Below are positions 4,931 to 61,779 of a stretch of 64,000 bases of DNA, in pieces. This DNA is from Dicyema japonicum (Eukaryota; Animalia; Dicyemida). The stretch covers positions 26,694 through 90,693 of the forward strand of contig RDEW01000050.1 of NCBI GenBank assembly GCA_011109175.1, read 5' to 3'. The notes below the pieces were generated by a model that saw only the letters and a program-made list of their open reading frames with translations, did not search any database and had not been told where the DNA came from. Each line of letters opens with the position of its first letter. Position 1 is the stretch's first letter. A program made the translations under genes and the position numbers.

Positions 4931-7331
4931 ATGCAAATTTCTTCATTGTATGCACTTTGCATTAATGAATATCGAAAAATCATTAATATGAAGAAATATG
5001 GCGGATTAAGCTCAAAGTCGAAGATGATGTTTGACAAAAGAATACATTATGAAATAGAATATTTGAAAGCACAAAATTCACAAAAGATATTATCAGTTTT
5101 GCATGATTTCTCAATATTAAGCAAACTCACAGAAGTATGTTACAACATTTTCCGCCTTGATTTGTCCAACAATCAAATTGATATTAAAGATCTAGCTGAT
5201 ATGTGCCAAAACCTACCAAATTTAACGAATATCAAGTTGGCTTATATTTCATCTTCCGAGAATATGCCTTATCTGAAGTATTTTCCAAATAATGTCAATT
5301 CTTTCACTCTTTTGGAATATGATGACCCAGTTTTACTTCATTTGCTATTTAAAAACGGATTCAGTGAAATTAGGTCACTAGAATTTTTTATCAGATTCTT
5401 TTCTTGAAAGAAGTAGTCCAAATAAAATTTATTGTTGCACAATCAAACTGATCATAGAACTCGAAAGAATTAATTTTGACAATGTTCTGGTATCCAATTT
5501 CGAAGAATTTAACAAAAGTCTTACCAGTCCCAGATCTCTAAGGTTTTTATTTTGTTAGATTAAGATACTTTTCGTATCCAAACAGTAAAGATGTCCATGA
5601 ATTAAGCTGTGATTGTAGAACGTTATTAAATTTAGCCACTAATTTAGAATTCTTTGATTTGTCAGGATTCTTGATTGATTATGGTTTACTAAACCCGTAT
5701 TTTGCTAGTTAACAATTAGAGAACTGTTGAAACACAGAATTGACACATTTTGCTTACAAAAAATATCGCAATTTTTTAAAAATAATGACAATGTGATATT
5801 ATAAAATATTTGTAGATTGAATCAAATTTACTCAAATATAATTTGGTTGATTCAATTTTTCACTTTGAGCATAAGGATGCGCTGATTTGTTCTACTTTAC
5901 ATTATATTAACAACTTCGACTCTGAAATTCGGCCTTCTCTTTATAAACGATTTTTGAGGGTATTTGAAATTATATTTTAGTTTATCTGCCGTTTGTTGAA
6001 AACATCACAAAATACTAATGTTATTCTACAAATCATGTAATCGCGTATGTTGACTTGATAGGTATTGTTTAAATACCGAAATCGATGGAATGAACATATC
6101 TGAATCTTATCGATGGTTTGAGTCCATGTTAACTTAGCCTTATTTATGAAGCTATCCTTGTTACTTTAAAAGCTCATTGTTGTGATCATACGGTAGTCAC
6201 ATTTTTTTATTTTTTCAGTTCAGAAATTTATTGTACACAGTTATAAGTTGCATAAAACCTTGGGAGTTACCAAATTTTGTATTTTGCTTGCTCATTTTTG
6301 ATTTTGTCTTTTTCATTTTTTACTCAAACATTCGTCAGGGATGTTCACATACACATCGAGGAATACACGAATGATTATGATGTCATGTATCCCACAATGA
6401 AGAGTAAAAGTATAGATATTTTGTCATATTTTGGATTTTGCGGAACAATCGAGGTAATTAGTTATTTTAAATTTAGTTTATTGTGAATCATATTAAAAAG
6501 TTTAAGGAAGTAGTAGCTTTCCCGTATTGTAATGTGGCTTGGAGGAATTTGTGGTATCTACTAGGTGATTTTGTTTTACTTTATGTGTTAGATGCAAACA
6601 AAAGAAATGCCACTTGGTTTGTTGAATTGGGAGGAATTGATCTTATTCTAGACTTCTTTATACAATTCCCTGAAAATGATATAATTTTAACTGATGACTT
6701 TATATATCCAGTTGTTAATGTTATTGAAAATCTAACTAAATTCGAGAATATTCGACCTCTGGTTATTAATAGTGGACTGATTAATTATTTATTGTACGTT
6801 TTGAGTAATTTTGATAAGAAATATGTAAATTTAGATTATCGGGCTGACATTATTGTCGCCATCAGCAATTGTTTATCGAACATAATGAGTGACTCCACTG
6901 AAGATTTGGAGATTTGCGATTGTCATGTTACTAAAAATCAATGCTTGTCTGAAAATATTCTCGATGCAATTGCTTCATGTTCAAATGATAATATGGGACA
7001 TTCACCTTATGAGGCATACTATCGGTAAGATATCATTTATACAAAAGATCTATTGATTCACTTGTAAACCTTTTAAATGAGGAATTAGACCAAAGACTAT
7101 GGTTTTGGGCCATTTGGGAATTTTCACGAATGGTTTACTACAAACGTACTATTTGTTGATTTAGTAGCCCAAATATTCATCCCAATGATGATGCCTAAAA
7201 ATGTCTTCAGCAAAATTGAAACTTTGGCTTCGCTATCAAATATCAAGGATCTACAAGAATATGCCATTGTCGTTAAAGAATCTTATAATGTATTTTTCTT
7301 ATTATTTTAGAATTATCTTTCGAATCACTAA
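4931..7331 (+). CDS. ZER1/ZYG11-family CRL2 substrate receptor (BC-box, LRR, ARM), multi-exon, with homopolymer frameshifts near 5385 and 5550
   Basis: N-terminal SSLYALCI (BC-box-like). AWRNLWYLLDANKRNATWFVELGGIDL, VIENLTKFENIRPLVI and YRSIDSLVNLL..LWFWAIWE resemble the ZER1 ARM region. About 12 introns of 21-27 nt. Confidence 0.8.
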
Positions 7332-8060
7332 TATTAACGATATTTTCTTTAATATTTTTTGTTCTCATAATTAAAACTTATTGAGACTTTAAGTTTAAAA
7401 TAAAGAGATTAATCAAATTTAGTGGTAATTACTTTCGAACTTCTTATTCGAAGTTTAAAATCCACAGAAAAGTGTCTGGGCTTATCTTCAAGTTTACCAT
7501 ATGTTTGATCGACTTCTTGGGAGGTATATAAAAAAAGGTATTTTCTCGGCCTGGTGAGAGAAGTGTTAGCTTTCCATGTTAAGGACAAGACCAACAAAAC
7601 TTTTGATTTATATAATATTATTGATTAAAAATTACATTTTTATATCTTTTAATTAATTTTAAAGAACGTATGAATTTTTGAATTTAAAAAGTTTAGTTAT
7701 TTAAGTTTATCAAGTAACCCTGGCATCATTAACTTTTGGAAGACCACCGGCTATTAAGTATGATCCAGTAAATGTCAGTCTTGTTTTGTAGAAAACTGTG
7801 TATTAATTCATGATATTCAAACATGTGATTTGTTGTGAACTAAGGGCAATTGCAAAAGGGACAGAGGATATCCTTTACATCATCCAATAAGTACGTCGGT
7901 AGAGTGGTGTAGTGCAATATCGACTTTTTTGAATTTTTTGAATTTTTTTTGAATCTATAAAAATTGTTCTTTTGGATTAAAATTCTAATTTTTAGTAATA
8001 TTAAATATTAATTTTATTGTATAAAATTAATATAAACTATTAATATTAATTTGAATCGTT

Positions 8061-9422
8061 ATGTCACGCTTGTTTGTTAAGACATCTGTTGAATATGATA
8101 ATCTCAAAATTATTCTGGAAGGAGGCTTACCTACTGTGCCTGCATGTGCTATGTGCAGGATCCGAAAAAAGTCCAAGAGCTTCGTTCTTAAAGGAGGAAG
8201 AATGTATCTAAAAGACCCAGAAGGCGATAAATTGATTATTGTTTCGGACAACGTTGAGGAAATGAAGTTTGTTGCTACTAAATTCATGATTTAACACATT
8301 GTGGCCAAAACATCCTAGAAGCATATTGTAAAGAACGATATTTTTTTGTGAAGAGAGATGTTATTCGCGATGTTGTTTCCAATTGTGAGACATGTCTTTT
8401 TGCCAGAAGTCTTAAGGAATATGATGAAGAAAATCATATAATAGCAACTCGGCCTAATGAGAGATTTCAAATAGATTTAATCGATCTTAAAAGGTATCAA
8501 TTTTTTATATTCTCTAGGTTTAGCGAGCATAATGATGGTTATTCGTGGCTTTTAACGGCTATTGATATTTATTCAAAATATGTTCATGGATTTTGGACCA
8601 TGTTTATATTTACAGTCGGACAATGGCTCCGATTTTAAAAACTCACATGTCACTGCAATTTGCAAGAAATATAACATTATTCAAATTCATTCACGTCCAA
8701 ACAAACCACGTAGTCAAGTTATACAATTGAATTATTTTTTATAGGAATTGTAAAAAGATTCAATCAGACAATCACTCGAACTTTGTCGAAGATGTTGTTT
8801 GATGATCCAAATTAATGTTGGAAAAAACAGATTAAAAAAGCTGTCCAATTTTATAATCTTAGTTATCATAGTTCAACAGGTTATATGTCCTTATATATAA
8901 ATTAGGTGACAATCCGTTTTGTCGTTACAGAGGCATCAAAGGATTTAATCCAATTCTCACTTATGTAGGCTACATTGAAAAAAATGATGAAGCAGTTGTG
9001 AATGGTTTGAGAGTTAAGCGAAATTTAGAAACTCAAATTGAAACAGAGAGATTCGTTAAATCAAGTGGAGAGGCAGGTTATCAATTTTTTTATTATTTCA
9101 TAGAATTTGACTTCATGCATTGTCCATTAGATTTGAATTCCCCTTATTTCAAAAGAATGAACAGAAAAATGGGTGTTCATTGCTCAAAATACTCATTCGA
9201 GAAAGGAGATGAGGTTAGTTAATTACATTGACAATATAGGTTTGCGTAAAAAAAGACCATGGGACAAATCCCTCGCTAAAGTTAGGGAAATTTGAATTTC
9301 CCTACAGTGAAAAAGTGAAAGTCGTAAATATATTGTCTAACAAGCGAATGACACTTCAATCAAATGAGGGACATACCGAGATCTTCCACATTAGTCGCGT
9401 TAAAAAGCTTAAAAAGAAATGA
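8061..9422 (+). mobile_element. Ginger-like (Gypsy-integrase-related) DNA transposon remnant containing tiny introns
   Basis: H..H..CETC Zn finger, RFQIDLID, LQSDNGSDF and SQGIVKRFNQT (rve DDE core). Intron gtatcaattttttatattctctag joins KR to FSEHND. No gag or RT nearby. Confidence 0.75.
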
Positions 9423-9689
9423 CTTACCTTTTCTTATAAATAAAATATATTTTTTGAATTTTTTGTCTTGATTGAAATTTAAATGAATACAATCGTCTAA
9501 CCTGGAATTTTTAATAGTTTAAAATGTTGAAAAATGAAGAGTTTTATTGTTGAAATTAATTTTTTAATTATTTAGAATGCTTCTCAGTATTATTAATAGT
9601 AAGATAATTTAATAATTTAAAAAATAAATTCAATTTCATTAACATAAATTTTTATATAATTTTAGTTTCATGTTTTTTTTGAGTAAACT

Positions 9690-12100: not shown

Positions 12101-12639
12101 TAGACAGTTATTAATAAAGTTAGTTGTGGCTTTCTCATGCAATTGGTGTTACATATCATCATCGCATCCCAATGTACTGTAAGATACGTCGTGGTACTTT
12201 TTCCTTTTAGATTCTTTAGCAGTTTCATCTGCGGCACCAGGGTACAACATTTACTTGACCAAATTCGAGAAAGATTCCGTGCACATACAATCTCAAGACC
12301 TTCTTTGGCTCTTTGCAAGGCTACGCTCTTGTCATCTCTTCTGTCAAGACCACTGGATCCAGAAGGCAAGTAACGTCTTCGATAGCCCTCCATCGATTTT
12401 AACATGACGAAGGAATCTTTCTTCACTGCGTCTGTATGAATAAGAATGNATACAAACCCACTTAATTAGTTTTTTTTTTTTTAAATGGTTCGACTTGTGA
12501 GTGTCTTAATACTACTCGTTTAATTTCGAGCAAAAAAAATCGATATTGCAAGTAGCGCATAGTTGCAAGTAGCGCTCGCGACATAATAAACATCATCATA
12601 GTTTAAAGAATAATTTTATTGAATATGGACTAGCTAGTA

Positions 12640-14069: not shown

Positions 14070-17000
14070 ATGTCATTAAAATATATTCAAGTTATAAAAT
14101 TGAAACACCTTCATTATATGCATTATGCATTAATAACATTCGAATTTACTTTTTTATGTGCTGCAATGAACAAAAATATATAAAATTAAACGAGAAGTCT
14201 AAAAAAATGTTGTCCAAAAGAATCCTTATCGAATTGGAATATTTGAATTCATGTCGTGAGAACGATATATATTTACAAGATTCAAGTTTTTATGGGATAT
14301 CGGATGTAGTACGGAAAGACATATTTTGCCTGGAATTGACTCGTGAAGATGTTGACATTAAGGACGTTGTTAATATGACTCAAGTTTATCCAAATTTATC
14401 AAATATTACAATAGGAAGGATTTTTTCATCAGAAACGAATCCTTTTCTATCATTTTCCCCCAATGAGGTCAAATCATTCACATTATTGTTTTATGATGAC
14501 CCAGATTTGCTACATCAGCTATTTATGACTGGGTTTAAAAAACTAAGGTATCTCAACCTCCTTGGACTCAGTAGCACAACGACTTTTTATAACAGTACAC
14601 TAAAAATAATTGAAAAACTGGAACGCATAAATTTTCACAAAGTCTTAATTACTGATTTTAAAGAATTTATTGAAAGCATTAACAATCCAGCGTCTTTAAG
14701 GTTTATTTATATCAAATTTAGATATTTTATACATACATGTGACAGAAAATTAAAAAAATATGACTCTAATTTCTTTTCTCTTTTCAAAAAAGCCAAGAAT
14801 CTTACTTGCGTGAATTTATCTGGATATTTTATTAAAAGAAAAATACTAAAAAAGTTAACCAAGTTATTTATTTTAATAATTCAGACGAATCAGAAAACTA
14901 GGATTTAAAAAATTTCGTCATAAGAAAATTTTACATTTCAGTAAAAATATAATTCTGTATATTTATAAAAGAATATAGAAAGATATTCAATTAATTTTAA
15001 ATAATCTTTTATCGTCTGCCCAACATTTTGATAATAAAGTCAAACTTTTGAAATATGTTATTTTAATGATTATAAATAATTTATCTCATTATAAAGTTGA
15101 TTTTAAAATTGAAAATAAATTATTAAAACCATTTTTGAAAGTAATTTAAAATATAAATTTAGTTTATCCGTCTGCCCAACATTTTGATAATAAAGTCAAA
15201 CTTTTGAAATATGTTATTTTAATGATTATAAATAATTTATCTCATTATAAAGTTGATTTTAAAATTGAAAATAAATTATTAAAACCATTTTTGAAAGTAA
15301 TTTAAAATATAAATTTAGTTTATCCGTCGGCGCAATTATGATGATGTATATTTCATTAGATTTATATACAACATAACGAGTAACCAATCTATTTCGTATG
15401 CTACAAGATGGTATGAGCTGATTTCATCCATAGCTTTATTTTTGATATTTATCTTCATATTATAACCTATGATAATTTTGTATCACTATCTGATATCTAA
15501 TTTATAGTGGTTTTTTTAGTTTTTCGACAATTATAAACCCTGGGAGATATCTATTTTTGTTAGTTTATTTTTATTTTAGCTTCCTGCGCTGTCAATTATC
15601 ATTACAAGTGCTACTTACCAACATCGATTTTCTGATTATGTTGAATTAAACATACAAAATATGAGCATCGATTTTCTAGTTTATGTTGGCTATTCTGTAG
15701 GACTTGTCAAAGTTCATAAAACAATTTTATTTTAGTCATGTGTTGAACGTTTTAAAACAGAAGACGTTTACGATTCTGCCAAATTTGATTTGCTGAATTT
15801 CCTTATAGGTATTCTAAATATACTTTGTTAGAAGAAAATGAAAAGAATATGAAATTGTTTCTTAATTATAATGGACTTCATTATATTTTTAATTTTTTCG
15901 AAAGATATTGTGCTTCTCCACCTAATTACGAATATATATTGATTCCCTTTATCAAAATTATTGAAAATATAGCTAAATGCTCACACACCAGACATTTAAT
16001 ATGGACACATGGTCTGGTAAATCTTATATTGTAAAATTGTTGTTTAATGAAAAGGGACATGGAGTATCCTTACGATAATAATAGTGTAAACTATTGTATA
16101 TTTCGATGTATCTGCCAGATGTTACGTGATCCAAATGATATTTNACATTTTAAAACAGAAGACATTCGTGATTCTACAAAATTTGATATGTCATGTTTTC
16201 TTCTATGTATTTAAAATATATTTTGTTAGACGAGAATAAAAAGAATTTGAGTTTGTTTCTGGATTATAGTGGAATTTATTATATTTATAATTCTCTCGGA
16301 AAATGTTGCATATCTATGGCTGCTTACAATTTTAAATTAATTCCAATCATTAAAATCGTAGAAAATATAGCTAAATGCTCTAATTCCAAACATTTAATAT
16401 GTGAGTATGGTCTAATAAATGTTATAATTTAAAATTATTGTTTATTAAAAAAATGTATTATCCATACTACTACTTTGTAAGCTATTCTATTTTGAGATGT
16501 ATCTGCCAGATATTAAGTGATCCAAATGATTTTTTCCCAATATTTTTGAATTCTGATTTTAGCGATTTGAATCCATGCGAACCCATTCTAAATAAAATTG
16601 TTAAGTTAATAAAAGATTTTCCTTCTCTATTCAGCGATTATTACGACAGGTATTATTTCTTATTTTCTATCTTAAGGTCAATGAAGTCTACGATAAATTT
16701 ATTGGATGCTGACCGAATTTGGCTTTGGGCTGTGTGGGAATGTGCTAATCTAGCAAGGAGTAATCGTTATTTTTTATTTTTATAATAGCACGTAAATATA
16801 TGGACATTTTTGTTTCTCTTAACATTCTTATGAAAATNGTGTTTTTTCCTATTTTCAATCTTAGGTCAATGAAGTCAACGATAAATTTATTGAATGTAAA
16901 CGCAGATGAACGAATTTGGCTTTGGGCTGAGTGGGAATGTGCTAATCTAGCAAGAATATATCGTTTTTTCTTATTTTTATAATAGAACGTAGATATATGG

Positions 17001-17146
17001 ACATGTTTATTTCTCATAACATTATTATGAATATTGAGAATGTCTGTCTCTTATCCAATATGGAAGAGATCTATTATTATGCTGAAATTTTTTGAATAAA
17101 TTACAATGCTGTTATTTTTTTAATTTAGAATAACATTAAAGAGTAG
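14070..17146 (+). CDS. Second ZER1/ZYG11-like paralog, with internal duplicated segments (partly assembly artefact or pseudogene)
   Basis: TPSLYALCI, YDDPDLLHQLF, IIENIAKCSHTRHLI and RSMKSTINLL..RIWLWAVWE parallel copy 1; several intron positions are shared. Confidence 0.7.
15013..15328. repeat. Exact 156-bp tandem duplication within ZER1-like copy 2
   Basis: cgtctgcccaacattttg at 15013 and 15169; the unit includes one 22-nt intron. Confidence 0.9.
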
Positions 17147-20659: not shown

Positions 20660-21820
20660 ATTATAACGACTGTAATGTATGTAATAATTTTAATTTCTTG
20701 TGGTCACTAGTATATTAATCATTTTGGTATTTAATCCTATAGATGTTCAACTTCATCATCTTATACTTTCCATTCTGCATTTTGACAGAGAAAAATTGTC
20801 GAGAAGAATTAGATGGNTTAATTATAACGACTGTAATGTATGTAATAATTTTAATTTCTTGTGGTCACTAGTATATTCATCATTTTGGTATTTAATCCTA
20901 TAGATGTTCAACTTCATCATCTTATACTTTCCATTCTGCATTTTGACAGAGAAAAATTGTCGAGAAGAATTAGATGGGTCGAGTTATGTGTATTAAATAT
21001 TAATTATTAAGATTTTGGAGAAATTGTATACTTTCTGAACTAAAATATGATCCTAAAATTTATAAATTAAAAATTCATAACATAATATCTCTACATGGCA
21101 ATTTTTCTATTATTGAACTGAATGTGGTTATTTTGTATTAAATATTACTTATTATAGTATCTGTGAGTTTGATGATAGTTTAAGATATATAGACAAACAT
21201 ACTCTTCCATCTACCATTAAGGAATTGTTATATATATTATTAAATTAATAGGTATATGGATGATTGCAATTCCCTTGTATACATTGCAATCGATTTTGCT
21301 GGACATTTAACATCACTTCACGACGTGTACATTTTTTTAATTTATGTAGTACCTTTCCAACAAGCATAAAAGTTATTAAAGCATTTAGAATTAGTACCAG
21401 TAACGTTCGATTATATTAGTATTTTTAATAATAATATAGTGGTGTTATCGTTTGCATTGATTCATTCGATANGTCTGTATGTATGATGATAGTTTAAAAT
21501 ATGTTGACAAACATACTCTTCCATCTACCATTGAGGAATTGTTATATATATTATTAAATTAATAGGTTTATGGAATTATGCAATTCCCTTGTATACATGG
21601 CAATCGATTTTGCTGGACATTTAACATCACTTTTCTATGTGTACATTTTTTTAATTTATGTAGTACCTTTCCAGAAAGAATACAAGTTATTCAAGCATTT
21701 AGAATTAGTTCCAGTAATGTTCGATTTTATTTGTATTTTTAATAATAATATAGTGGTGTTATCGTTTGCATTGATTCATTCGATAAGGCAGAGGCGTATG
21801 ATATTATATTTATCATAGAC
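20660..21820 (+). pseudogene. Multi-exon LRR-like gene fragment, tandemly duplicated around single-n junctions
   Basis: LPSTIKELYMDDCNSLVYI-type repeats separated by GT-AG micro-introns; duplicated blocks flank n at 20817 and 21472. Confidence 0.45.
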
Positions 21821-21999
21821 ATAAACCTCTACCTAAAAAATGTATAAATCTCATAAATAATAGCTTGACTATGATACAAAGTGAGTTCGTTATTGAAAAC
21901 AACGAGCAGACTAGTGGAACATGTAATTAATAATGTTATTTCAGACTGCAGTGCCATTGTAGACAAGTACAATGTCCTTGGCAATTGCCTAATTATCAA

Positions 22000-26085: not shown

Positions 26086-26166
26086 NNNNNNNNNNNNNNN
26101 NNNNNNNNNNNNNNNNNNNNNNNNNNNNNNNNNNNNNNNNNNNNNNNNNNNNNNNNNNNNNNNNNN
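26086..26166. other. Assembly gap
   Basis: Run of n; sequence just before the gap overlaps sequence just after it. Confidence 1.
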
Positions 26167-39727: not shown

Positions 39728-42700
39728 ATGTATTCTTCGTTACGAAATTACATATTGCCGTTTTACGAGGAAAGAAACCCAATTTTCAAGTGTGATAAAC
39801 CGACTGAGAATGTTTTAGACAAATATGAGAATTTAGATAAAAACATCGAGCATACTGTTATTTTTATATCCATATATATTTGAGGATGATTCCCCTATTA
39901 ACTACGAGATGCAGCCTTGTGATAATATTACTTGGATTGGTGACAAATATTAATATTTCAGATCCACGAAACAAGAACTACATTTCCACAATAAAAGACA
40001 TTGGGGAAAGATCTAAACGACAGTATGAGGCACTCAACAGTCATGCTTCCTTTAATATACTACCAAACTCTAAATATGGAGAAATACTGGACGCATGCAA
40101 TGAAAACAGACAGAAAATTCAAGTTAGACTGACTTTGAATTACAGTCAAACCGACTATTGTTTCATTATATTGGACTGAACTGTCCACCAACTAAAAATG
40201 GGAAAATTTGGATTTTTAGAACCAACTCTAAGGATTTTTCTGATTTTGTTGAAATTGACAACGAAACGATTATGCATATCGTCAAATCACCTGCCATCTT
40301 TATATTCGATGTATCTGCCGCTGGGGCTATTATCCAGGATTTTAAAGTATTCACTCATTCTAGTTTAGAAATACATCAAAGGTCAGGACTACATACTCCT
40401 TGCTGCCTGTTCTGCAGATGAAAGGATAGCACGTGTCAGTAATTTACCAAATGACTTGTTCACCTGTTGTTTGACCTCTCCTGTCCTTACTTCCGTCAAC
40501 TGGTGGTTTTATTATTATTTTTAGGTTTCTTATGATTAATAATCAGAAATTTAAGAATATCTCCACGTTATTAGAGTTATATTATTATTTAATTAGAGAA
40601 TCCCTGGAAACTACAAGGACAGAAAAACCATCAATGGTCAACTTCACTGGATTCTTACTGCCATTCAGGACACTATGGCCTTCGAGATATTAAACTCGGG
40701 TTTTTTGTTTACTTACTTAGACAAATTTACTAATCTATTTCGTCGGGAGACTCTGGTCAGTTCACTTTTCAGGAACTACTTGCTGGCTTCTCACATTTTG
40801 GGCTATTATGGCATACATCCGGTCTCATACCCTTTTATTCCAAACACGGAAATTCATCCTCTGTGGTTTATCTTTGTTTTATTCTCGGGAATGTCTGGGA
40901 ATCTATTGTTGAAGAGGCAATACTTAACATTTTGTCCCCAAAATTTGAAAGTCCTAACCTTGCCTCAGGTTTCTTTGAAGAGGCGATCCAGTCGTTCGAG
41001 TTTTACACAAAAGTGAAGAGAAATGATGGTTCTCTGCTTCCGGCGATCCTCCAGGCTATTTTGGTTCAGAACAACCGTACAAGAGCATTTGCAGCACTCT
41101 GTGAGTATATTGATCTCGGTGGGGACTCAGCTGTGATGAATGTACTAATTATAGAGAATGTAGTTAGTGACTGCCGGATTTAGTAATTATATAATAAGAC
41201 TACTCCCCTCTTCCAAGGATACTTTGCAAACTCTTTTGTTGTTTGTTTGGGGTAGAATTATGACCGTTGATTATGTTTGTTTAATGTTTATTCTCAGAAA
41301 TCACAACAGGATTCAATGAATAATAATTTCTACAAATTATTCGTATCAGTAATTGCCAACCATGCATTATCTGACAAAACTAGGTCTTATGCTGGATACT
41401 GTCTAACTCTATTGGCTGATTCTGTCAACACAGGAGTCCTTGTTTGTGAAAACCAGGTATTTATAGTAAACCATCCCAGTCTTTGAATTTTGCCGACTCA
41501 ATCGTCGAAAGCTGTCTTTCCCTCTTCAACCAAGAGGAGAATTCTCACTACTATTTGTTCCTTACATCAAAGGTTATGACAATCCTAATATAGATTTATC
41601 AAAACAACCATTATTCCCACTCATCTGCCTATAATTTGGACATAGTTAAGAGTATTTGTCATTTTATGTTCAACAAATCCCCAATAGTATGTCATTGTGT
41701 CATTTATAGGTCAGAGCGGCCACTGTATATTGCCTCCGCTCTCTTTTGGTGAATCTTTACACAAACCCCGTAATAACTGATGATAAAATTAACATATACA
41801 CACAAGTTATCGACTGTTTGAGGAAGTCATACTCTAATGATGCCTGCTTTCTCGTTAGAATTGTTTGTTTTACATTTTACCACCAGGAGACCTCACTTTT
41901 AGTTTCTTCTCTCCTACTCAGTTTAATGTATTCCGAGATGACTTGTGACGAATCTATTTTCCTCAGAGTTCTTGGAAAGGTGTCTCTCCTTCGCTGAGGA
42001 TATCCATGCTTCGGAATCTATAACAAATGGTCCAAAATTTACTTATAGTGTTATTAAGTTGTTTCGATCACCACCTGTAAACCAACAAGTTACTTTAATC
42101 TGATCAAACAGGAAACTAAAGCGTGGATCATGACGGGTATGCTTAGCTGGGATCTCTACAGAAGACTGCATAGAGATTTTATGAGGCCCAATTATAGTCA
42201 CCACAAACTTAAATGCTCGGAAATATACGCCCGATTTGACCATGAAAATGATATTCGTTATAAAAACACGATGGACTGTGCGACAGATCTGTCTATTATC
42301 TCTGGTTTTTAGATTTTATAACTATAGATATGAGTCTATTTAGTAAAAGGAGGACAGTTTCACTCTCAGGAGGGAAATTGAGTCACAAAGTTATAGAGAT
42401 GAAGTACCAGACCTTTAGTAAAGAATTATTTGTATGCCATGACCTTGAGATTAGGTAATGTAGTATGTAATTAAAGTGTGATTAATGATTTATGTGCAAA
42501 AAGTGTGATTAAATCAACAAATTTAATTTCCTCATTTGAAATATTAAATGAACATGACAAAACCCTGTTATTAACAATATCTCGTACAAATCTGTGTAAT
42601 AATTAGGCAATCACTCCATCAATATTTACAGGAATGAAACAGGCTACGAATGTGTCAGATCATGGACTCCTTCTTTTAGTTTATACTAGTTTAATCAAAG

Positions 42701-43444
42701 AACCTGGAATTAGTTTGTGTTCTGCTTGGAGTCAAACCTTTGGGATCCTGGCAGTCTCTGATTATATGTCCATCTCTCTCTGGGACCTCGAATACGAGCT
42801 GATGACTACCGTTTTATGTTTTCTATATTTTAGAGAATTCCGTGTGTTTACTCTGGGATAACTTGCATAAAGTTTGATGATTCTGGAAACAAATATATTG
42901 CCACTTGCTTTGATAATGGATATGTGAGCATTTTCGATCTCCGAGAGAGGATTAGTTTATTATATATTGACAACTAAGATAGTCAGTCCAAGAATATTAA
43001 TTTTGGGAGTAGCATTTCTTCAATGATATTTGACTCTTCTCTTCCACAACCCCTTACATGCATCTTGTAAAGATTATTCTAATTTTAGATCAAATGGCCA
43101 AATATGTAGTTCTAAGATTATTGAAAAACAACAGATTAATGGATACAAGTTCCCTAGGAATATTTATTCTTCCATTTATCATCCCTTTTATAAGCTTATT
43201 GCTTGGTGATATGTCTGCTTATTATAGCTGCACTGACGATTCGAGAATCACTTTTGTTAATTCAAATATGATGACTTTGATGAATAATATATCTCCCATT
43301 ATTTACCCAAAAAATAGTTTTCAAGCCATCAAGTTCTGTTTTCATCAAATTGAGGTATTTCTCCAATCATTTTTATAGGGAAAGTTGGCGGTCTCTAATT
43401 TACAAGGAGTTGTCAACATTTATTATCATAATCAATACTTTTAG
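39728..43444 (+). CDS. RPTOR: Regulatory-associated protein of mTOR (Raptor), about 25 micro-introns, about 1050 aa
   Basis: WIDP, LFHYIG..PPTKNGKIWIF, FIFDVSAAG, LLAACSADE, LPNDLFTCCLTSP, IPG..DRKT..GQLHWILTAI and LFRRETLVSSLFRNYLLA, then HEAT and WD40 regions. Frame traced manually to TAG. Confidence 0.95.
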
Positions 43445-49643: not shown

Positions 49644-50704
49644 TTAAATGTGGTTATTGTAGGACATTATTATTGACATTAATGTCTTTTTATCAATTAT
49701 ATCCTTTATTGGGGATATATTAATAAAGGTATCACATATTTCTTGAATATCTTTACCAGTGAATGTCTAAATAGTAACACAATTTACTTGATTTGTTATT
49801 TCATGAAGTTCTCTAAAGAATGACCCCAATTCTGCGCGAGTTAGGTAATTTTTATTACCCTATCACTTGTTATTAACTAACGTGTCTTACATTATCACAA
49901 AATTGAAAAGTCCTGTTGATATCCTCCTTTGAAAGTTTTCCTGGCTTTTTGAATCCATTGTTGGCCATGAAATTCTCCTTGATTGGCAGTAAACAAAATA
50001 TTATTATTTATTTACCGAATCATCTCCTGTAAGTCTAATTTCCCGTCCTTATTAAAGTCAAATATTTCCAACTAGTTATACAATTGTAGAATTACCATTA
50101 TTTCACAATATTCCTGAAACTTTGACTCAGACACCTCGTTATACCCATGTTTTCTGAGTAAATAATGTAAAAATTTCTAAATTTGAGTTCAAATCAACAT
50201 TTAGTTCATGTTGTTCGATGAAACCATTAGAATCCTCATCAAATTCTATCCAAACCTTCATAAACTGAATGCTTGAGTTTAATTTGGTTTCCTCCCTGAA
50301 AAACAACAGAAATTGTTCGTCTCCCGGAAGTATTTGAGTTAACTGAGGTTCAAATTCAATTTACCTCTCTTAACTCAATCTTCCCGTCTTTGTTGCTGTC
50401 ATAGGCTTCCAAAAAGGTTTTCTTTAATTCCTTGAAGGCAGTGTTGGATATTGCCTGGATAATAGATTAGAGTACCTCATCCCCCGCTTCCAATTCAGTT
50501 ACACTGGAAACCAAATCCCTCAGAAAATTATCGACTTCTTTTTCATCAATGTAGGAGTTAGCTGTAGTTGTTATAAATAGTACAATTAGTATCGTAGTGA
50601 TGCCACGTCTCCATGAATTGATGAGCTGTCAATTTTACAAATTCTCTGCTCTGTCGATTTCGGAAACGCCTGAGCACATTTGTTCGTTCATTTGTACTGA
50701 ACAT
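49644..50704 (-). CDS. Calbindin-32/calretinin-family hexa-EF-hand protein (Cbp53E-like)
   Basis: KLTAHQFMETWHHYD, FLEAYDSNKDGKIELREL..ILP..EQFLL, FMKVWIEFDEDSNGFIE and FDFNKDGKLDLQEMIRLLPIKENF; 8 introns. Confidence 0.92.
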
Positions 50705-50913: not shown

Positions 50914-53900
50914 ATGAAACAGACTATCAATCTCTCTAATCTTAGCATTGGAAGAGGACATATTGTTAAGGACAACAGTCATGAAAAGGTCAATGTAATT
51001 CTCGCCTCTAAAGTCATTTTACATTTATGTCTTTAGGAGAAACCGATCTACAATGTTGGTCTATATAATCAAGCTGGCCCACATAAAAACAAACTGATTT
51101 ACTTAAAAACTGCAAAAACATATTCTACAAAATATGGAGCTCTCGTTATTTTCTCAGAAAATCTCGTTGATGGAATGAGCGACTCTGAAATTAAAATGGA
51201 CAAAGAAAAAAACTACATATTTCTTAAAATATCAGATTTTTCCAAAGGATTCAGTAAAATTAACCTAAAGGTTTACAATTGTCTCAAATTTAAGGAAAAA
51301 CAAAAGTCAGTTCGTTGGTTAACCGCAGAACAATATCTTTCCAAATGGTCGCAAGTTACAAAAATTGATTCTGTTAGGATAAAACGTTGTATTAAATAAA
51401 TATTTCAGAACAATCAGAAGAAGCCAGAAATTTGATAATAAATGGTTTTATGATGAAGTACCATAATCTGAAGAAATCAATTTTTGGATTTCAGCCTAGT
51501 CCGCGAAATGTCCTCACAACCATCCTGAAAGAGGAAAAACATAGAATAAAGGAAAATAAAAAGGGTTTCTTTTTCATTAACCTCAGTCACTGGGAAATAT
51601 GGGAAACATGCTTTATATACTCGCTACTTTAATATAAATTCTACGATTCCACATATTGAGCATAAAAAGAAGAAATACAAGGAAATGTCCTCACAAGAAC
51701 AACACGACAAGCTCACTGATGAGATTGCCAAATCAGTGATAACTCAGGCCATCTTAACTCACCAAGTAACAACATTGTGAATTTTAGGAACTAAAAGCTG
51801 CAGCGTCCGAGAAATCAAGTTCTGATGAGGTTTTAAGATTTTATTATTCAGAAATCTTACAAAGATATTGAGTTGGTCAAACCAGAGATTTACATTAAGG
51901 ACTCTTTTGTGACGGATGACATTTATTCACTCAATGACTCTTCTGGTTTGTAATTTTGTGTATTTTCAGAAAAGGAAGATATAATAATAAAAAATTTGAC
52001 AAAAACTATTGAAAAACTAGGGCAATCTATTTTGGAGAAACCAGGATCTGGACAAGACATTGAGTCTGATTTAAGTGTAATCAACGTAGAATTCAATTTT
52101 AGGAGTTAACAAGAACTATGAGTCAAATAAAGGAAGATATCATACACCACATTCAGTCATCGTCCTCATCTATAAGTTTTTATAAAATATAATTTAAGTA
52201 AAATCTTTTGAATCTAAAGATGTTTTGGAAGACTTGAAATCACAAAATCAATTCAATGTTGTTGAACAAAGTAACTATGGTATATTGATATTCCAGATTA
52301 TGTTAAATGTGTAACTGATAAATCATCCACGAGTTCTAAGGATGTTAATGTAATCAATATTTATTATTTAGACAATTCCTTATATAAAATCACTAATTCC
52401 TTCAGAGGAACAATCAAAGTCTGAGTTGACAGCAGAGGTTATTTCTTGGTAATTTCAGAGCATTCAATTATCAGAGAAAAGTAAAGAATCCCTCAAAAGT
52501 TCAGTAAAGCTAATGTCGGAAATAAAAAGTATTCTTTCGAAAAGTCTCTCTGAGGATTCTAGTAATGAAAATATTTATTTTTAAGATCTGCAAGTCCTCA
52601 ACAAAATAGAAAGTGTCATAGAATCAGTAAAATCAAAAGTATTAACAATCAATAATTTATAGACTACAAGCACTCCAGAAGACAGCTCTCTCATCAAAAG
52701 TTTAGAAAGCATACGTGAAAACTTAGAAAGGAGAATTCATGTTTATTTTATTATACATAAAAGGATTCCCAAACGTCTGAGAAAATAGATAATTCGTCAT
52801 ATAAAGAACAACGAGAACTATTAAGTTCGGAGACTAAGGGTTGTGGTCAAATAATTGTACAAGAAAGTAAATCCTACGTTGATGAAGAGATCAGGTCTTC
52901 GGTTGAGAGTTTGCTGATATCTTTGGATAAGAAAATAGAGTCGATCGAAAAAACCATGCAGGTTTTATGTCTTATGAATACAAGACTTCATCTAAGAGTA
53001 GTATCAGTAAAAAGAATTACGAACTATCAGATTTGAGCTTTTCAAAACATTCCCAATCAGAAGAAAAGTCACAAGAGTCTCGTGTATGATTTCTAACTAA
53101 ATCCCCTCAGTCACATCTCCAAGAATCTAAAATAGAATCCTCCGAAGAGTCTCGTCCAAGATTTCCAGACGAATTGCAGTCAAGTTGTCCTCAGCATTCT
53201 CAACAAGAATACACGGAAGAATCCATATCAGAATTTAATCATGAAATAAAGTCTTATAAAGGAATACTAAAAACATCATCTGACAAGTCTGAGCAAAAAT
53301 CAGACCAAATACAGTCAGGATCACAAAAATCAGAGCAAAAATCAATCCAATTTCAGAGTATAGAGACTCTGAGTTGATATCAGATCAAATACATTCAGGA
53401 ACACAAAGGTCTGACCCAAAAGAAAGTTTAAAAGACTCTGAGATGATATCAAACAAAATGGAGTCCAAAGAATCAAAGTCAGTAGATGAACCTCAAAGTG
53501 ATATTTGTTCATCAAATTCAGACGTCTCTCACAAATCAGGATCATCACAACCCTCTAAACTCCAAAAATCAGATTATCCTCACGAAATATCAAAATATGA
53601 AAAGATAATATACGAAGGTTTAATTTCTGACAAAATTTAAGAATTACAAAAAACGTCAGAATCATCTCAAAGCATAAATTCCTTGGATGTCCCCAAACCA
53701 AAGGTAGAAAACGGAGGTAGTAGAAAATATAATATAAAAGAACATGAAAATATTAAACAAATCGGAAAACCCAATCCAAGTTCTACAAATGTTGAAAATG
53801 AAGTTTCAAAGAAAGACAAAATTTTATCGAAAAAGCAGATAGACCAATCGACAGATCATTCAACAGTGAAGGAAGGCAAAACAAAGCTGAGTATAAATCA

Positions 53901-55374
53901 GAGAATATATTTTAAGAAAAGAAAGTAAAAGACGGAGAAACCGAGAATATAAAACAATCGAAAATAATCAAAGAAGACAAAATAAGTTCAGAAATTGGTA
54001 GCAAAAAGAAAGAAGGAAAATCAGTGAAGCAAAAAGTTAAAAAAGCCGAAAAACAAATCAAAAAAACAGAAAAGGTATTCCAGTATAATTATACTTTAGA
54101 ATATAGAATCTACTGAGGAAAAACCAGTTTCGAATGAAGAGAACTCTAAAAGAATGAGTGATGTGGATAAACTGGAGTTACTCGAACCTGTAAACAGTAA
54201 TAATTATGACAGGAAAAGATTATAATATCTGAGAGAACCTCCAACGTATCTTCCGACTACAAGGAATCGTCATTAATAATTGATAAACTCGTTAAGGAGC
54301 AAACAGAGTCGACAAATGAATCCAAAAACATGGAGAATGTGCCTGAGTTTTCGTTCATTAGAGTGGAAGTATAATTTAAGTTTTATAAAAAGAGTGATCA
54401 AGAATCTGATGATCTCGGACACAGGTCGACAACATATGTTCAACCTCAAAGAAATCTATTTTATAAGGAGGACCTGAAAATAAAGGAAAGCAACACAGAA
54501 GTATAAAATTAATGACAAAAAAGGAATACGAAAGAAAGTCAATAAACAAGGAAATAAATTTAAAAAAGCGAGAATTAGCATTAAAGAAGAAACAAGAAAT
54601 GTCTGTGGCCAAACAAAAGGAACGAATGGATTTACTAAGAAAGCAGCAAGTCGAGAAGGAAATGGAAGAAAATCTCCAGCGTGAATTTAATGAACGAGTC
54701 AAACTCCAAGAATTGGAAGCTTTGTAATAGTTGATAACAACTTGTTAGAAAGCAGAAAGAAGAGGAGGAAAGACAGGCTCTCATGGAAGAGAACGCGAAA
54801 CAAATGGAAGAAAAAAATCAAAAGATACAGAAAGAGCGACGGGACAAAGAAAGAAGGGCATATATTCTGAAAATGCAAAAAATCAAGGAGAAGCAGGATG
54901 AGGAAGAACAACAACGACTGAGTGATGAACTAAATTTTAAAATAGAAATTGAACAAATGAAAAAACTTGAAGAGGAAAGAAGGTTGGAGAATGAGCGACA
55001 GATGATTTCCAAAATGAAAGAGGACGAGTATATAAAATATATGGAAGAAAAGAAGGAAAGGGAAAGAATTCAAAAAATAAATGAAGAACAGAAAAGGTTG
55101 TATTTTATTGTAGTTTTAAAGACTTGCTATGATTGAAGCTGAGAAATTGGCTTTGATTGAACAGAATAAAATTATTGCTGAAAAAAAGAAACAGGAAGGA
55201 ATTATCCTTGCCAGAACTATGTTTTTAAGAAATTTGAAGGAAGAAAATATTTGTGGGAAATATTCTTTAGAAATCACACGTGCATTTGTCTATTCATATT
55301 TTGAATTGCTACAATGGGTCTCTGATTCTGATGAAAATAAAGTTGAAGTTAATTTTATGGATAATTTAAACTAA
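50914..55374 (+). CDS. KIAA2012-like protein (conserved termini, S/E/K-rich middle, coiled-coil C-terminus)
   Basis: LSNLSIGRG..., KTYSTKYGALVIFSE and C-terminal ITRAFVYSYFELL resemble KIAA2012 as I recall it. More than 20 micro-introns traced; one apparent indel near 53340. Confidence 0.7.
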
Positions 55375-55439
55375 ATTTAATTTAATATCTAAATTTATTA
55401 TTTTTAATATTCTTATATTCAAATTTTGTTAAATTTTTC

Positions 55440-56999: not shown

Positions 57000-58790
57000 G
57001 TCGTCTTGTTCAAAAAACTATTGATAACCTGTATTCAATTAAAGCTTAGACGTATTCTGGAATCACTTCTTTGAATTCAAAAATGGACAATACAAAGTTT
57101 CCTACAGATTATCGTCCGATTACCTGTATGACCACCTAAGACAAGTAGATGCTTTGTTGAGGTTGATGGTATTTGAGAACCAACTTGGAACTGCATGAAA
57201 CTACCAGGTTTCGTATTCTCATGAGAACTTATGTGAAAAAAGGATTTGATTCTGATCATAGCTACCTTATTTATTGTCTGTTTCCCTGTGTGGTCTACTC
57301 AGTTTGTTACGTCTGTCATGAACAGGTCAAGTGTTCATCTGCACTATAAAAACATAATATTGGTGAGATTACTATTGAAAAGGAGATTTTGCATGAGATA
57401 GTATGTTGCCGGTGTTTTTTGTACTCTGCCTCTAACCGTTGAGTAGACTTAATGTCCAATTCGTGCCCATCATTCATGAGGAGGTTTGTTTTAGCATGAA
57501 TTACCTTGTGTTTATTGATAACATAAACTGCTCTCTCGTGTGAATGTGATTAGTATTTAAAAAACTATATGACAGTTACATAACACTGGTCATTACTGTA
57601 AGGATTTTATTTCCAAATACTTGTCTGAAGGTGAAGGTGGGTAAAAGTTATTCGGAAACGTTCATGAGGTAATCCTCAGGTGAATCACGCCAGCTCTTTT
57701 TACAATTTATTCGGAAGCTATGGACGCCGCCAGACACCCCTCCATGCTCGAACCAGTAAGTCTTTGCAAGCGTGGTATGTGTGTTGACTATAAACATGGA
57801 ATTAAACTCAAGATAACTAAATTTTCCCAGATGATTTATTTTTTCCTGATCATGAGACGGAGAAATGGAAATTTAATGACCAAGCTTTGAATGAGAATAC
57901 AAATCCTCACAATATTTCTGATAAAACCTAGGAACAGAGTTGTAAGAATTAAGAAGCAAATAGCTGTACATCATTCGAGGAAGGACTTTCGCAAGGACAA
58001 CTGTTGTTTTGAATTAAATCGAGGAAGATTTTATCCGAACCTATCAGCAAGCAACGAAGTAACGTTATATGGTTTCGATGATGAGGATTGTATGTCGTTC
58101 TGGGAAAAAGTGTGGTCTAAAAGAAAAAGGATGCACGTGCCATATGACAGTGTGGGTAAAGTAAATACTGGTATTGAAGGCATGTTGTCAGAGTTCACAA
58201 ATGAGTTTATCCTGGATGTTATTAAATGGCTCCCTGATTGGAAGGCGTGTGGATGCGGCTCATATAACTTCTTTATTAAGAAAATGGAATCTTTACATGG
58301 CTTTTTATGTACTGAGATTAACCGAATTATTAATGGGGAATATATGCCTGAAAGTTGGTTTATACTGGAATAACCTATTTAATTCCTAAAAAGGATGATT
58401 GTGAGACTCCTAATGACTTACGTCCTATCACGTGTATGCCAACTTTATTTAAACTTATTATCAAATGTGTTAACTCTCAGATTTTGTGGATTCGTTTGGG
58501 CTATTATCTGACAATCAGCTGGGAACGAGGAAACATTGTCAGGCTAAGGAACAGGCCCTTATTAATCAATGCTTAAATAAGGAGTATGGAAACGCCCTTT
58601 ATTCTGCTTGGGTGGATGTGAAGAAGGCCTTTGATTCTGTTGACCATGAATTTTTATTTCATATATTGGACTGTTCAGGAATACCCCGTTGGATTGTTAA
58701 CTTTGTAAAGACCATAGTCAAAGTGGACTGTAAATCTCCACTTAGATGGAAGAAGAATTGGTTCTGTAAAACTGGGACGTGGAATTCTGA
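57000..58790 (+). mobile_element. R4/Dong-like RT fragments (two decayed pieces)
   Basis: GITYLIPK..LRPITCMPTLFK, NQLGTRK..KEQALIN and AWVDVKKAFDSVDH; a second YRPITCM at about 57110. Confidence 0.8.
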
Positions 58791-58820
58791 TTTATTGTTT
58801 TTAAATGAATTAAATTTAAA

Positions 58821-61779
58821 TTAGAAAATATGATTAGTGGTAGAATTAGTGTTATCAATTTGCTTTGGCCATACTAAACCCTCCCCAACAAACTTAGGTT
58901 TATCATTAATTATGGGAATAATATTATTTTTATTACTTATTCTAGCAATCATAATTTCTGTTTCCCTACAAAATAAGTCAATATTTACTTTTCTTGTTGT
59001 TCCTTTTTCTTTTGAGAGTAATACTTTTTCTTAATACTTTGCAACTCCATTCCCAACTTGTCAATGTCATGTTTGTACTCTTGACACTGAGACTCGTACA
59101 TATTTAATTCACTCGTTAATGACTAAATCATCAATATTCAACCACTTTAAGCTGACGACTCTTCTCTTTCAATGATCTCTGATATAATTGAACTTGTTCT
59201 ACCATTTCAGGACCAGGTTGTCTGGCCAATATTCGTTTAAGTTCCATGTATAACTTTTCCTTTTCTTGAATTTGCAACTCTTTCGCCACGACCTCTTCAG
59301 TTTTCTTTATAAGTCTCACTTGTAAGGCCTGAATTTTCTTTATCATTTCAAATGCTGATGGATCACTTCCCTGATAAATTACACAATAAATAGTACCTCA
59401 AGTTTACGCCATCTGTGAACATTCAAAGGTTTGTCCAACTCCTCTTCCAAAGCTCTTACCCTGTTTTTTTCCATTACCAATTGTTTTTGTAAGACAAAGA
59501 CTTCGTTTCTGATTTCGTCGTAGTTGGAAAGTGTCTTTTTAAGAGCCATCTGTTCTCCCCTCAGTCTCAAAATTTCTAATTTGAGAACTCTGATGTCCTC
59601 CACTCTATGTGAATATTGGACCTCTCCCTTTTGAAGGGTTGAAGATTGAATTTTTATTTTCTCGTAAAGCAAAGCTAGTTCATCATTTCTTCTGACCAAT
59701 TGTGATCCCAAAATATCCCTTTCTGAGATGACCTGATCCAACTCCTTTTTCTGTCTCAAATATTCATTATCAGCCTCCTGAATTATTTTCTGTAACCTTG
59801 ATTCTTCAATTTCCTGTTCCTCAATAATAACTTTGTTTTCGGCCAACATTTGCTTCAACTTTTGAAGTTGAATTTTCAGAGATTCCTTTTCCTTTTCGAT
59901 CCTCACAAAATTAGTATGTTCTGCTATGAGAGATTGTTCTTTAAATGTTATCATCTCCTTTAGCTGATCTATCTGGTGGTTCATGATTTTCAGTTTCCTC
60001 TTCATTTCTGAGATTTCATCCTAACATTAGTTTCAAGTAAACCTGAGATTCTATCAAATTTTTACTGTAGAGGTTCCTATCACTCCGAACTGCCTCATAC
60101 AAATTCTTCTGTTGCTTCAATTTGACCTCCCCTTCCGCAATCATCTTCTTGTAGTCAAATATCTGCATTTCCATCATTTTTATTTCTTCCATTTGATTTA
60201 ACACCTAAATTACAGATTCTGCAAACTTTCTGAGTCAGATCAGATGCCTCGTTTATGTAACGATCTCTTTCTTTTTCCAACTGAAATATTATTTTTCGTT
60301 GCTTGCTCGCTTCTTCTTTGTAAACTTCGACTTCTTGCTCAAGACCTCTCTTTCGTTTGTCATGGATTTGCACTAGGGAGGCATATTTGTCCACAGAATT
60401 TGTGACTTTGGTTAAATTCATAATTTAATCAATTTAATACTTTTTTTAGGACTTCACGTTCCTTTGTTATGTCGTCAATGAACTTCTTTTCTGACTCAAT
60501 CTTTCGTTTATGATCAATGATTTCTGATAAATTCTAATAAATTACCCTTCTCTAAGGTTGCTATCTGATTTTTGAGTGGGTTTTTACTCGCCTCGAGTTC
60601 TTCCTTCTCTTTTTCAGCCTGTTGGAGTTTTCTTGTGATGTTATCTCGATTCTTTCTAATTTTGTTGAATTCCATCTTCAGAGATGCAACTTCGTCGTTT
60701 AGTTGCTATAAATAATTAAATTATTTACTTTTAGTGACGTATTCTTATAACTATTTTCTGCTGATATTTTGTCCAACATTACCATTTGAGCTTCAGATTC
60801 CTGCTGTAGCTTTTTATAACGAGTTTGTAGGATCTCCGAATCATTCTTTAATTGATCATATGTTTGCTAAATTATATATTCACAATTACTTTTTGTTCAT
60901 TTATTAATGATTCTTTATTTTTCATTTCAATCTTAAATTTGTTAATCTGCACTTTTAACTCTTCCGTTTCTCTCTCCTTTTCCGCAATATTCTCTATTTT
61001 TTCATGCAATACTCTATCTGCCTTGTCTTTTTTTCTCTTTTCGTTTTGTAATTGTGTTTCGTTATCTCTTAAATCTGATTTCAACTAAAATATTATTTTA
61101 TATTTCAAACGTTGCTTATTTCTTCTTGAATCTCCGATAGCTTATTTTCAAGTGATTCGTTTGTCATTTTGACTTTATCACTGTTTTTCCGCAATTCCGT
61201 GATTGTCGTTAACAGTCCATCTCTTTCGTTAATCAACTCTGTTTTGGCATTGATCAATTCAGTGACACTATTTTTGATATTTTAATAAAACTTGACTTTT
61301 TGTCCAACTGCCATTCCAGAATCCTCAATCTGTTTACTCAAATCAGTTATTTCATCCTCCAAATTTTTGATTGAAATTCGGCTATCGATTTCTCGTTGCT
61401 GAGCAGCATCAACAATTTTCCACGCTTTTTCAATTTCCTTACATTATTTTCATAATTACAGATTTGAGTGCTGAAATTGTGTCTTGATCGTCTTTAGAAA
61501 TTCTCATAGCATCTGCAACCTTGGTTGTGTTTCCGATCAGTTCGGCATTCAATTCTCTGCATTTCTGCATCAATCGGATTTCATTTTCGTGAGAATTTAT
61601 CAAAGTTGTGTGCAATTTTTCATATTCAACACGAAATTTGTCAAGTGAAGGGTCACCAAATAATTCTTTTAATACCTAATTTTACTATAATTTGTTACTT
61701 CTTGGAAATCATGTTCCAATTCAGTAAAGGCAGCTTCGTTCATACATAAATGATCTTTCTCCAATTCATCCTCCCCCAT
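58821..61779 (-). CDS. CFAP58: Cilia- and flagella-associated protein 58, 13 micro-introns
   Basis: DPSLDKFRVEYEKLH, RLMQKCRELNAE, EIEKAWK, LYEAVRSDRNLYSKNLIESQ, ERDILGSQLVRRNDELALLYEKIKIQ and PLNVHRWRKLEGSDP. Confidence 0.97.

What the first reader, a model, noticed from the sequence alone, without database searches (positions are those of the whole stretch)
4931..61779. Candidate non-canonical splicing system: micro-introns with GT-TG and GT-GG boundaries recur in conserved genes
Seen: I traced roughly 90 introns by hand. Four of them, each in a different gene (ZER1-like, RPTOR, calbindin, CFAP58), have modal length (22-23 nt), a GT donor and an AT-rich body. Each is needed to restore frame, yet ends in TG (three) or GG (one), with no in-frame AG nearby. 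The terminal G is always kept and only the -2 A varies. Established: U2-type acceptors are almost invariably AG, read by U2AF35 and the Prp8/U5/U6 active site; TG acceptors elsewhere are rare and mostly alternative. Inference: a few percent of introns here use an obligatory NG acceptor chosen by distance from the donor, which implies a modified spliceosome.
Basis: partly seen in the sequence, partly recalled or inferred. Interest (0 to 1): 0.92.

Follow-up and report, generated by a model that had tools for sequence, protein, structure and literature searches.

The report
Tiny introns that end in TG
In the octopus-kidney parasite Dicyema japonicum, roughly one to three percent of the 22-base introns end in TG (perhaps also GG) instead of the near-universal AG, and for two of them transcript evidence shows removal exactly there, although the parts of the splicing machine I checked look normal; in humans such ends were reported to work only as side options next to an AG.

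Summary
The genome is Dicyema japonicum (67.5 Mb, 377 scaffolds). All four introns are in the sequence. CFAP58: a spliced contig (depth 398) lacks exactly the GT..TG intron, and DNA contigs (420x, 27x) confirm T at -2; the true length is 23 nt, the assembly having dropped one base. Calbindin: the TG-spliced model matches the deposited D. japonicum protein BAH29721.1 at 289/291 residues, and no AG alternative exists. ZER1-like: 46 paralogs end this intron in AG, while this copy and its sister copy end it in TG. RPTOR GT..GG fits homology in a single-copy gene, but no reads were laid on it. I found a fifth case, in glycyl-tRNA synthetase. Frequency is about 1.4% (0.5-3.3%), against 0.02% in human. 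'Modified spliceosome' is not supported so far. [quoted passage not shown] Best reading: the ordinary major spliceosome, with the branch A 7-8 nt from the end, docks the nearest Y-N-G when no AG is in reach. This scan noted TG and GG ends in many other windows of this genome; I found no paper describing them.

The parts
60419..60440 (-). CFAP58 micro-intron, GT..TG; true length 23 nt (the assembly lacks one base inside it); phase 0; joins ...REVLKK|NLTKV...
   Evidence: Spliced contig of run X5 (2616 nt, depth 398) leaves out exactly 60419-60440, with a unique gap placement. DNA runs X4 (420x) and X1 (27x) show no substitution here, only one extra base inside the intron, so the end stays TG. 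Ab initio posterior 0.82-0.86.
49994..50015 (-). Calbindin micro-intron, 22 nt, GT..TG; phase 2; joins ...EMIR|LLPIKENF...
   Evidence: The spliced 291-aa model equals D. japonicum BAH29721.1/B9ZYV8 at 289 positions, including the junction. No canonical alternative; retention gives a stop. The genomic -2 base was not checked by reads.
6279..6300 (+). ZER1-like micro-intron, 22 nt, GT..TG; phase 0
   Evidence: 46 paralogs have AG at this intron, and three of them have an intron identical to this one except for A at -2. TG occurs only in this copy and its closest sister copy on scaffold C352. No RNA test; expression of this copy is unknown.
40866..40888 (+). RPTOR micro-intron, 23 nt, GT..GG; phase 2; joins ...HPLW|NVWES...
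   Evidence: The upstream exon ends at human Raptor residue 379 and the downstream frame resumes in register within about one codon. Single-copy gene. No nearby AG. No reads were laid here.
15559..15579 (+). The same intron in the in-window ZER1-like paralog: 21 nt, canonical GT..AG (internal control)
4931..7331 (+). ZER1-like gene, one of at least about 50 paralogs; about 16 micro-introns
   Evidence: Weak PF22964 hit, E 0.0013; family list; gene model
39728..43440 (+). RPTOR gene, about 22 micro-introns; probable assembly indel near 43180-43200
49644..50704 (-). Calbindin gene, 8 introns, 291 aa
58821..61779 (-). CFAP58 gene, 13 introns (12 covered by the X5 contig); one base missing from the assembly behind 58882, so the true stop position differs
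26086..26166 (.). Assembly gap among retrotransposon fragments; not part of any of the four genes

Best explanation
These are ordinary U2-type micro-introns whose acceptor A(-2) mutated to T (probably also to G) and which the standard major spliceosome still removes. Shown: a TG end is in the DNA and is the junction used in the dominant transcript (CFAP58); the TG junction is in a deposited protein (calbindin); TG derives from AG by one change (ZER1-like family); the core acceptor-reading parts are conserved. Inferred mechanism: a 21-27 nt intron is recognised as a whole, with the donor GT and a branch A placed 7-8 nt from the 3' end. This leaves too little RNA to scan, so after branching the nearest Y-N-G docks. 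G(-1) still pairs with G(+1), and the -3 pyrimidine still meets the Prp8 alpha-finger glutamine. Only the A(-2) to branch-A Hoogsteen contact is lost, and fixed geometry makes that loss tolerable. AG wins when one is in reach; TG is the fallback. Early U2AF35 reading of AG is inferred to be dispensable for such introns.
For: RNA and DNA contigs at CFAP58. Calbindin protein identity. Paralog series 46 AG: 2 TG, with TG in sister copies. Fifth case in glycyl-tRNA synthetase, colinear with the human enzyme without a gap. In 265 canonical introns, A is enriched at -7/-8 (212 of 265), only 12 upstream AGs at a would-be length of 19 or more are skipped, but 22 TGs at 20-23 are skipped for a later AG. 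All five NG introns have A at -7 or -8 and Y at -3. Conserved machinery. Structural basis from the yeast P complex: G(-1)/G(+1) pair, A(-2)/branch-A pair, Gln1594 on the -3 pyrimidine, and Slu7 dispensable when the branch point to 3' splice site distance is under nine nucleotides (10.1101/212811).
Against: The branch point is inferred from base composition, not mapped. The A at -7/-8 (80% of canonical introns) and the lack of a nearby AG (78% of canonical introns have no second AG either) are weak discriminators for five cases. In yeast, U at -2 gives a strong second-step defect (10.1101/212811), and human AG>TG mutants are not spliced at TG (PMC2374985), so geometry alone may not suffice. Proofreading factors (Prp22/DHX8, DDX41) were not examined. 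FAM32A was not detected. U2AF35 has S34T. Logan contigs show only the dominant path, not efficiency. The RNA sample differs from the DNA sample.
Confidence: 0.6

Rival explanations
1. TG/GG ends are real and spliced, but need a lineage-specific change outside the parts examined: relaxed second-step proofreading (Prp22/DHX8, DDX41, loss of FAM32A or SDE2), U2AF35 S34T, or a U2AF35-like paralog.
For: FAM32A not found. U2AF35 carries Thr at Ser34, a residue that binds the -3 base. Prp8 has N to S next to the RNaseH hairpin. A weak U2AF35-like second hit lies at C112:1078543. Precedent in Fritillaria, where duplicated U2AF reads non-canonical ends (PMC13326754).
Against: The residues that contact -2A and the Prp8, Prp18 and U6 elements are conserved. 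There is no close U2AF35 duplicate, and the weak hit may be ZRSR2, since U12 snRNA is present. Failing to detect a short, fast-evolving protein in a micro-intron genome proves little. About 98% of introns keep AG.
Confidence: 0.27
2. The introns are removed by the minor (U12) spliceosome, which tolerates unusual ends.
For: A U12 snRNA is in the genome (85 bits); other notes of this scan report U12-type introns.
Against: The donors match GTATCCTT at only 3-5 of 8 positions, none has a CCTTAAC-like branch site, and the ZER1-like TG intron differs from its AG paralogs at the -2 base only.
Confidence: 0.04
3. The non-AG ends are assembly errors, minor alleles or decay in dead gene copies. This is excluded for CFAP58 but remains open for single sites, above all the RPTOR GG (my odds for that site alone: about 0.3) and for whether the ZER1-like copy is functional.
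For: Two run-length deletions shown in 3.2 kb; more are probable in Prp8, ZPR1 and RPTOR. Heterozygosity is 1.24% (PMC6736024). The ZER1-like family holds many broken copies. The RNA run is from another sample.
Against: DNA contigs at 420x confirm TG at CFAP58. The errors seen change run length and do not swap A for T or G; X4 shows no substitution over the gene. Two sister paralogs on different scaffolds share TG. CFAP58, RPTOR and calbindin show no sign of decay.
Confidence: 0.07
4. The pre-mRNA is edited to restore AG before splicing.
For: None; it cannot be excluded because the edited base would leave with the intron.
Against: U-to-A and G-to-A editing are not known in animal nuclear pre-mRNA (own knowledge).
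Confidence: 0.02

Closest known systems
Human TG 3' splice sites in U2-type introns (Szafranski et al. 2007, PMC2374985)
   Same: TG as the acceptor of U2-dependent introns, verified as genomic.
   Different: In human they are 0.02% of sites, always alternative and tied to a nearby AG, and the authors state they cannot work constitutively. Here TG is the only acceptor, the dominant junction, and about 1-3% of introns.
C. elegans germline non-AG acceptors TG, AT and GG (Ragle et al. 2015, PMC4484395)
   Same: TG and GG acceptors in short introns, favoured by closeness to the 5' side.
   Different: Three cases, each an alternative to an adjacent strong AG site and tissue-specific; introns about 67 nt at the median.
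Non-canonical introns of larvacean tunicates (Fritillaria; Soo et al. 2026, PMC13326754)
   Same: An animal whose major spliceosome removes introns without AG ends.
   Different: There most introns are non-canonical at both ends (AG/AC, AG/AT), the last base changes, and U2AF is duplicated. Here GT and the last G are kept, 98% of introns are canonical, and U2AF35 shows no close duplicate.
Ultra-short introns of dicyemids and myxobolids (Hadjez et al. 2026, PMC13644364; Zverkov et al. 2019, PMC6543705; Lu et al. 2019, PMC6736024)
   Same: Same organism and intron class: 20-27 nt, signals reduced to GT and AG, weak A residues just upstream of the end proposed as the branch site.
   Different: These papers describe the acceptor as AG and, in the passages I read, mention no TG or GG ends. 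Ogino et al. 2010 could not be read, and the calbindin protein was already deposited, so an earlier anecdotal mention is possible.

Membership tests
U2-type spliceosomal intron | GT donor | tested here: met
   All five start with GT
U2-type spliceosomal intron | AG acceptor | tested here: not met
   TG or GG; TG confirmed in DNA and RNA contigs for CFAP58
U2-type spliceosomal intron | Precise removal from the mRNA | tested here: met
   CFAP58 spliced contig and calbindin protein; not tested for RPTOR, ZER1-like or GlyRS
U2-type spliceosomal intron | Branch adenosine and lariat | tested here: inconclusive
   A at -7/-8 in all five and in 80% of canonical introns; no lariat data
U2-type spliceosomal intron | Descent from a canonical GT-AG intron | tested here: met
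   ZER1-like paralogs identical except for A at -2
U12-type intron | RTATCCTT donor and CCTTAAC branch site | tested here: not met
   3-5 of 8 donor matches, no branch motif, although U12 snRNA exists
Human-type alternative TG acceptor | Works only beside a nearby AG acceptor, as an alternative | tested here: not met
   No in-frame AG nearby; none at all for calbindin; TG junction dominant in CFAP58
Fritillaria-type non-canonical system | Duplicated, divergent U2AF subunits | tested here: not met
   One U2AF35 plus one weak 46% hit over 26 aa, and one clear U2AF65 locus
Fritillaria-type non-canonical system | Changed m6A pattern on U1/U6 | not testable with these tools
   A METTL16-family gene is present; modification state unknown

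The most novel reading that the evidence does not exclude
D. japonicum runs a genuine Y-N-G acceptor rule: several hundred introns (about 150-1000 of roughly 31,000) end constitutively and efficiently in TG or GG because second-step proofreading of the -2 base has been relaxed by a lineage-specific change in the spliceosome (for example loss of FAM32A, altered Prp22/DDX41, or U2AF35 S34T) that evolved with the 22-nt introns.
Probability: 0.25. Interest if true: 0.85.

Novelty: new variant of a known kind. Interest (0 to 1): 0.68.

Why it matters
The AG at an intron's end is among the most invariant signals in eukaryotic genes, and published human work concluded that TG cannot serve as a constitutive acceptor. 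An animal that uses TG as the only acceptor in conserved genes, with an apparently normal catalytic core, separates two things that are normally tied: recognising AG and docking the nearest G at a fixed distance from the branch point. It gives a natural set of hundreds of test introns for how much the A(-2) to branch-A contact and U2AF35 really contribute, which also bears on reading -2 splice-site variants elsewhere. In practice, gene predictors that require AG will break or mis-splice a share of Dicyema genes (with about 6 introns per gene, perhaps 5-15% of genes), which affects gene-loss claims for this reduced genome.

Tried and rejected
The first gene-model training collapsed on a tandem repeat and was rerun without it. 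The ab initio model finds planted non-canonical acceptors only 16-49% of the time (TG 40%, GG 41%) and missed the ZER1-like and RPTOR cases, so its class counts are only suggestive. Its other non-canonical calls (GT-TA, GT-CT, TA-AG, TT-AG) sit 1-2 nt from a normal GT or AG and are best read as assembly indels; this is shown for Prp8. No other dicyemid orthologs were found, so there is no cross-species test. Read laying has one call, and no two candidates lie within 6 kb, so only CFAP58 was tested; run X6 covered only part of that intron. Ogino et al. 2010 is not in the library. The SDE2 search used a yeast-type profile and is uninformative. The ABCE1 break in L027 turned out to be a canonical 34-nt intron. 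Spliced models were searched exon by exon, by reference; the joined step was left out of all search tools, and joined models were built only in local scripts.
Full report
Organism and setting. The assembly has 67,542,437 bases in 377 contigs, matching the published Dicyema japonicum genome of 67.5 Mb in 377 scaffolds (PMC6736024). The window's calbindin matches a D. japonicum database protein. A gene model trained on 281 kb gives introns of 20-27 nt with a mode of 22-23, and signals reduced to GT and AG, as published (PMC13644364). The N gap at 26086-26166 lies among retrotransposon fragments, more than 14 kb from the nearest candidate, and no model crosses it.

The four introns. They lie at + 6279-6300 (ZER1-like, TG), + 40866-40888 (RPTOR, GG), - 50015-49994 (calbindin, TG) and - 60440-60419 (CFAP58, TG). 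Retention shifts the frame in all four. Calbindin has no canonical alternative in the range searched; the others have only long alternatives that delete 6-33 residues. With equal priors for every non-canonical end and no homology input, the model picked the CFAP58 and calbindin TG introns, and GT-TG was its top non-canonical class.

CFAP58 is shown at DNA and RNA level. Run X5, listed as 'DNA?', behaves as RNA: one 2616-nt contig at depth 398 carries 279 gap letters. That equals twelve introns plus one inserted base; nine of the twelve deletions are listed in the table and three are inferred from the sum. One deletion is exactly 60419-60440. Its placement is unique and reads GT..TG, while the other eleven can all be read GT..AG. 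No retained-intron or alternative contig was laid, though contigs drop rare forms. DNA runs X4 (420x) and X1 (27x), one sample and probably the assembly's source, show no substitution in the intron but one extra base inside it. The true intron is therefore 23 nt and still ends in TG. X5 is a different sample, so an AG allele there is not formally excluded; but the DNA sample shows only TG in a conserved, otherwise intact ciliary gene.

Calbindin is supported at protein level. The model spliced at TG gives 291 aa and differs from BAH29721.1 at two positions, neither near the junction. Other animal calbindins align through the junction without a gap. The genomic -2 base was not checked by reads.

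ZER1-like shows the origin. Short pattern searches find this intron in 48 family members: all have GT, 46 have AG, and two have TG. Three AG copies have an intron identical to the window's except at -2, and two of those also share the next exon's first bases. The second TG copy is the closest paralog (92% identity, other scaffold) and shares a diagnostic exon base with the window copy, which points to one A-to-T change before a duplication rather than an assembly slip. That copy's T run is one shorter, so an independent loss of the A is also possible, and its next exon looks broken. At a second intron of the family one copy has AA, so the family does not prove that only -2 can vary.

RPTOR is the weakest case. 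The upstream exon ends at human Raptor 379 and the next frame resumes in register within about a codon. The gene is single-copy. No reads were laid, and the gene has a probable indel error elsewhere. Unchecked notes from this scan list several more GG cases.

A fifth case and the frequency. In 220 introns outside the window the model found a 24-nt GT..TG intron in glycyl-tRNA synthetase (L022:7317-7340). The flanking exons align with the human enzyme at 551-577 and 585-642, in exact register across the junction. Five in about 350 is 1.4% (95% interval 0.5-3.3%). The window alone gives 4 of 130 but is selected; the independent sample gives 1 of 220 at about 40% sensitivity. The human figure is 0.02% (PMC2374985).

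Assembly error as a rival. The scaffold has run-length errors: two shown in 3.2 kb and others probable in Prp8, ZPR1 and RPTOR. They explain most other odd ends that my model proposed. They do not explain TG at CFAP58, and none seen swaps A for T or G.

The machinery. U6 has a normal ACAGAGA box and AGC triad. U2, U5, SF1, U2AF65, Slu7, Prp18, Cactin and a METTL16-family gene are present. Prp8 residues 1447-1546 differ from human at two positions and keep the equivalents of yeast Gln1594 and Arg1604; the next exon and the RNaseH hairpin are nearly identical. The Prp18 conserved loop is intact. U2AF35 has no close duplicate and keeps Phe20, Cys27, Arg28 and His29, the residues around -2A and -3 in the crystal structure (PMC7505975); Ser34 is Thr. 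FAM32A was not detected. A U12 snRNA exists, but the five introns lack U12 signals.

Mechanism, inferred. Canonical introns have A enriched at -7/-8, rarely skip an AG once 19 nt long, but do skip TG for a later AG. All five NG introns have A at -7 or -8 and a pyrimidine at -3. In the yeast post-catalytic structure G(-1) pairs with G(+1), A(-2) pairs with the branch A, Gln1594 binds the -3 pyrimidine, and Slu7 is dispensable below nine nucleotides between branch point and acceptor (10.1101/212811). With the branch point at about that minimum distance, the nearest Y-N-G should be held at the active site, and only one contact is lost. I give this 0.6. A change in proofreading or in a factor I did not examine gets 0.27, because U at -2 is strongly harmful in yeast and human.

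Comparison and novelty. TG acceptors are known in human and C. elegans as rare alternatives beside an AG (PMC2374985; PMC4484395). Wholesale non-canonical splicing is known in Fritillaria with duplicated U2AF (PMC13326754). A constitutive, sole TG acceptor at percent level in micro-introns was not found in the literature searched; Ogino et al. 2010 could not be read. This scan has noted the same class in many other windows of this genome, one with RNA support by its own account; I treated those as leads only. Verdict: real feature, new variant of a known kind, interest 0.68. Joined spliced sequences were kept out of all search tools.

Noticed in passing
G000:C79:163471-163599 (-) and C112:1078543-1078620 (+): U12 snRNA (85 bits) and a weak U2AF35-like hit, possibly ZRSR2: the minor spliceosome appears to be retained in a genome of 22-nt introns.
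   Followed up: partly
L022:7317-7340 (+): 24-nt GT..TG intron in glycyl-tRNA synthetase, in exact register with the human enzyme.
   Followed up: yes
window 58882 and 60419; probable at about 46790, about 43180-43200 and L018 about 5925: Run-length indel errors in the assembly that frameshift CFAP58, ZPR1, RPTOR and Prp8; apparent broken genes in this assembly need read checks.
   Followed up: partly
window 4931-7331 and 14156-17095; about 50 loci genome-wide: Large expansion of a diverged ZER1-like LRR/ARM family, many copies broken or internally duplicated; one subfamily has lost an intron precisely (C1, C35, C268, C338 copies).
   Followed up: partly
L016:1433-2200 (+): U2AF35 has Thr at the Ser34 cancer hotspot and seems to lack a long RS tail.
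   Followed up: partly
L029 (-) 17784-17762 in the stitched L029+L030 coordinates: Model call GT-GA that may be another 22-nt GT..TG intron next to an indel error.
   Followed up: no
L018:1072-1051 (-): 22-nt GC..AG intron in an NAD kinase gene (posterior 0.99).
   Followed up: no
window 41980-41998 (+), approximate: RPTOR seems to need a 19-nt, unusually GC-rich GT..AG intron, shorter than any in the confident set, or there is a further assembly error.
   Followed up: no
L027 (-), ABCE1 gene near 1260-1225: A 34-nt intron that skips an AG at 27 nt, unusual under the first-AG pattern.
   Followed up: no
window 50914-55374 (+) and 20904-21884 (+): A 1275-aa low-complexity and coiled-coil gene with about 27 micro-introns whose C-terminus recalls KIAA2012 (from memory, no Pfam hit), and an internally duplicated membrane-protein-like gene of unknown family.
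   Followed up: no
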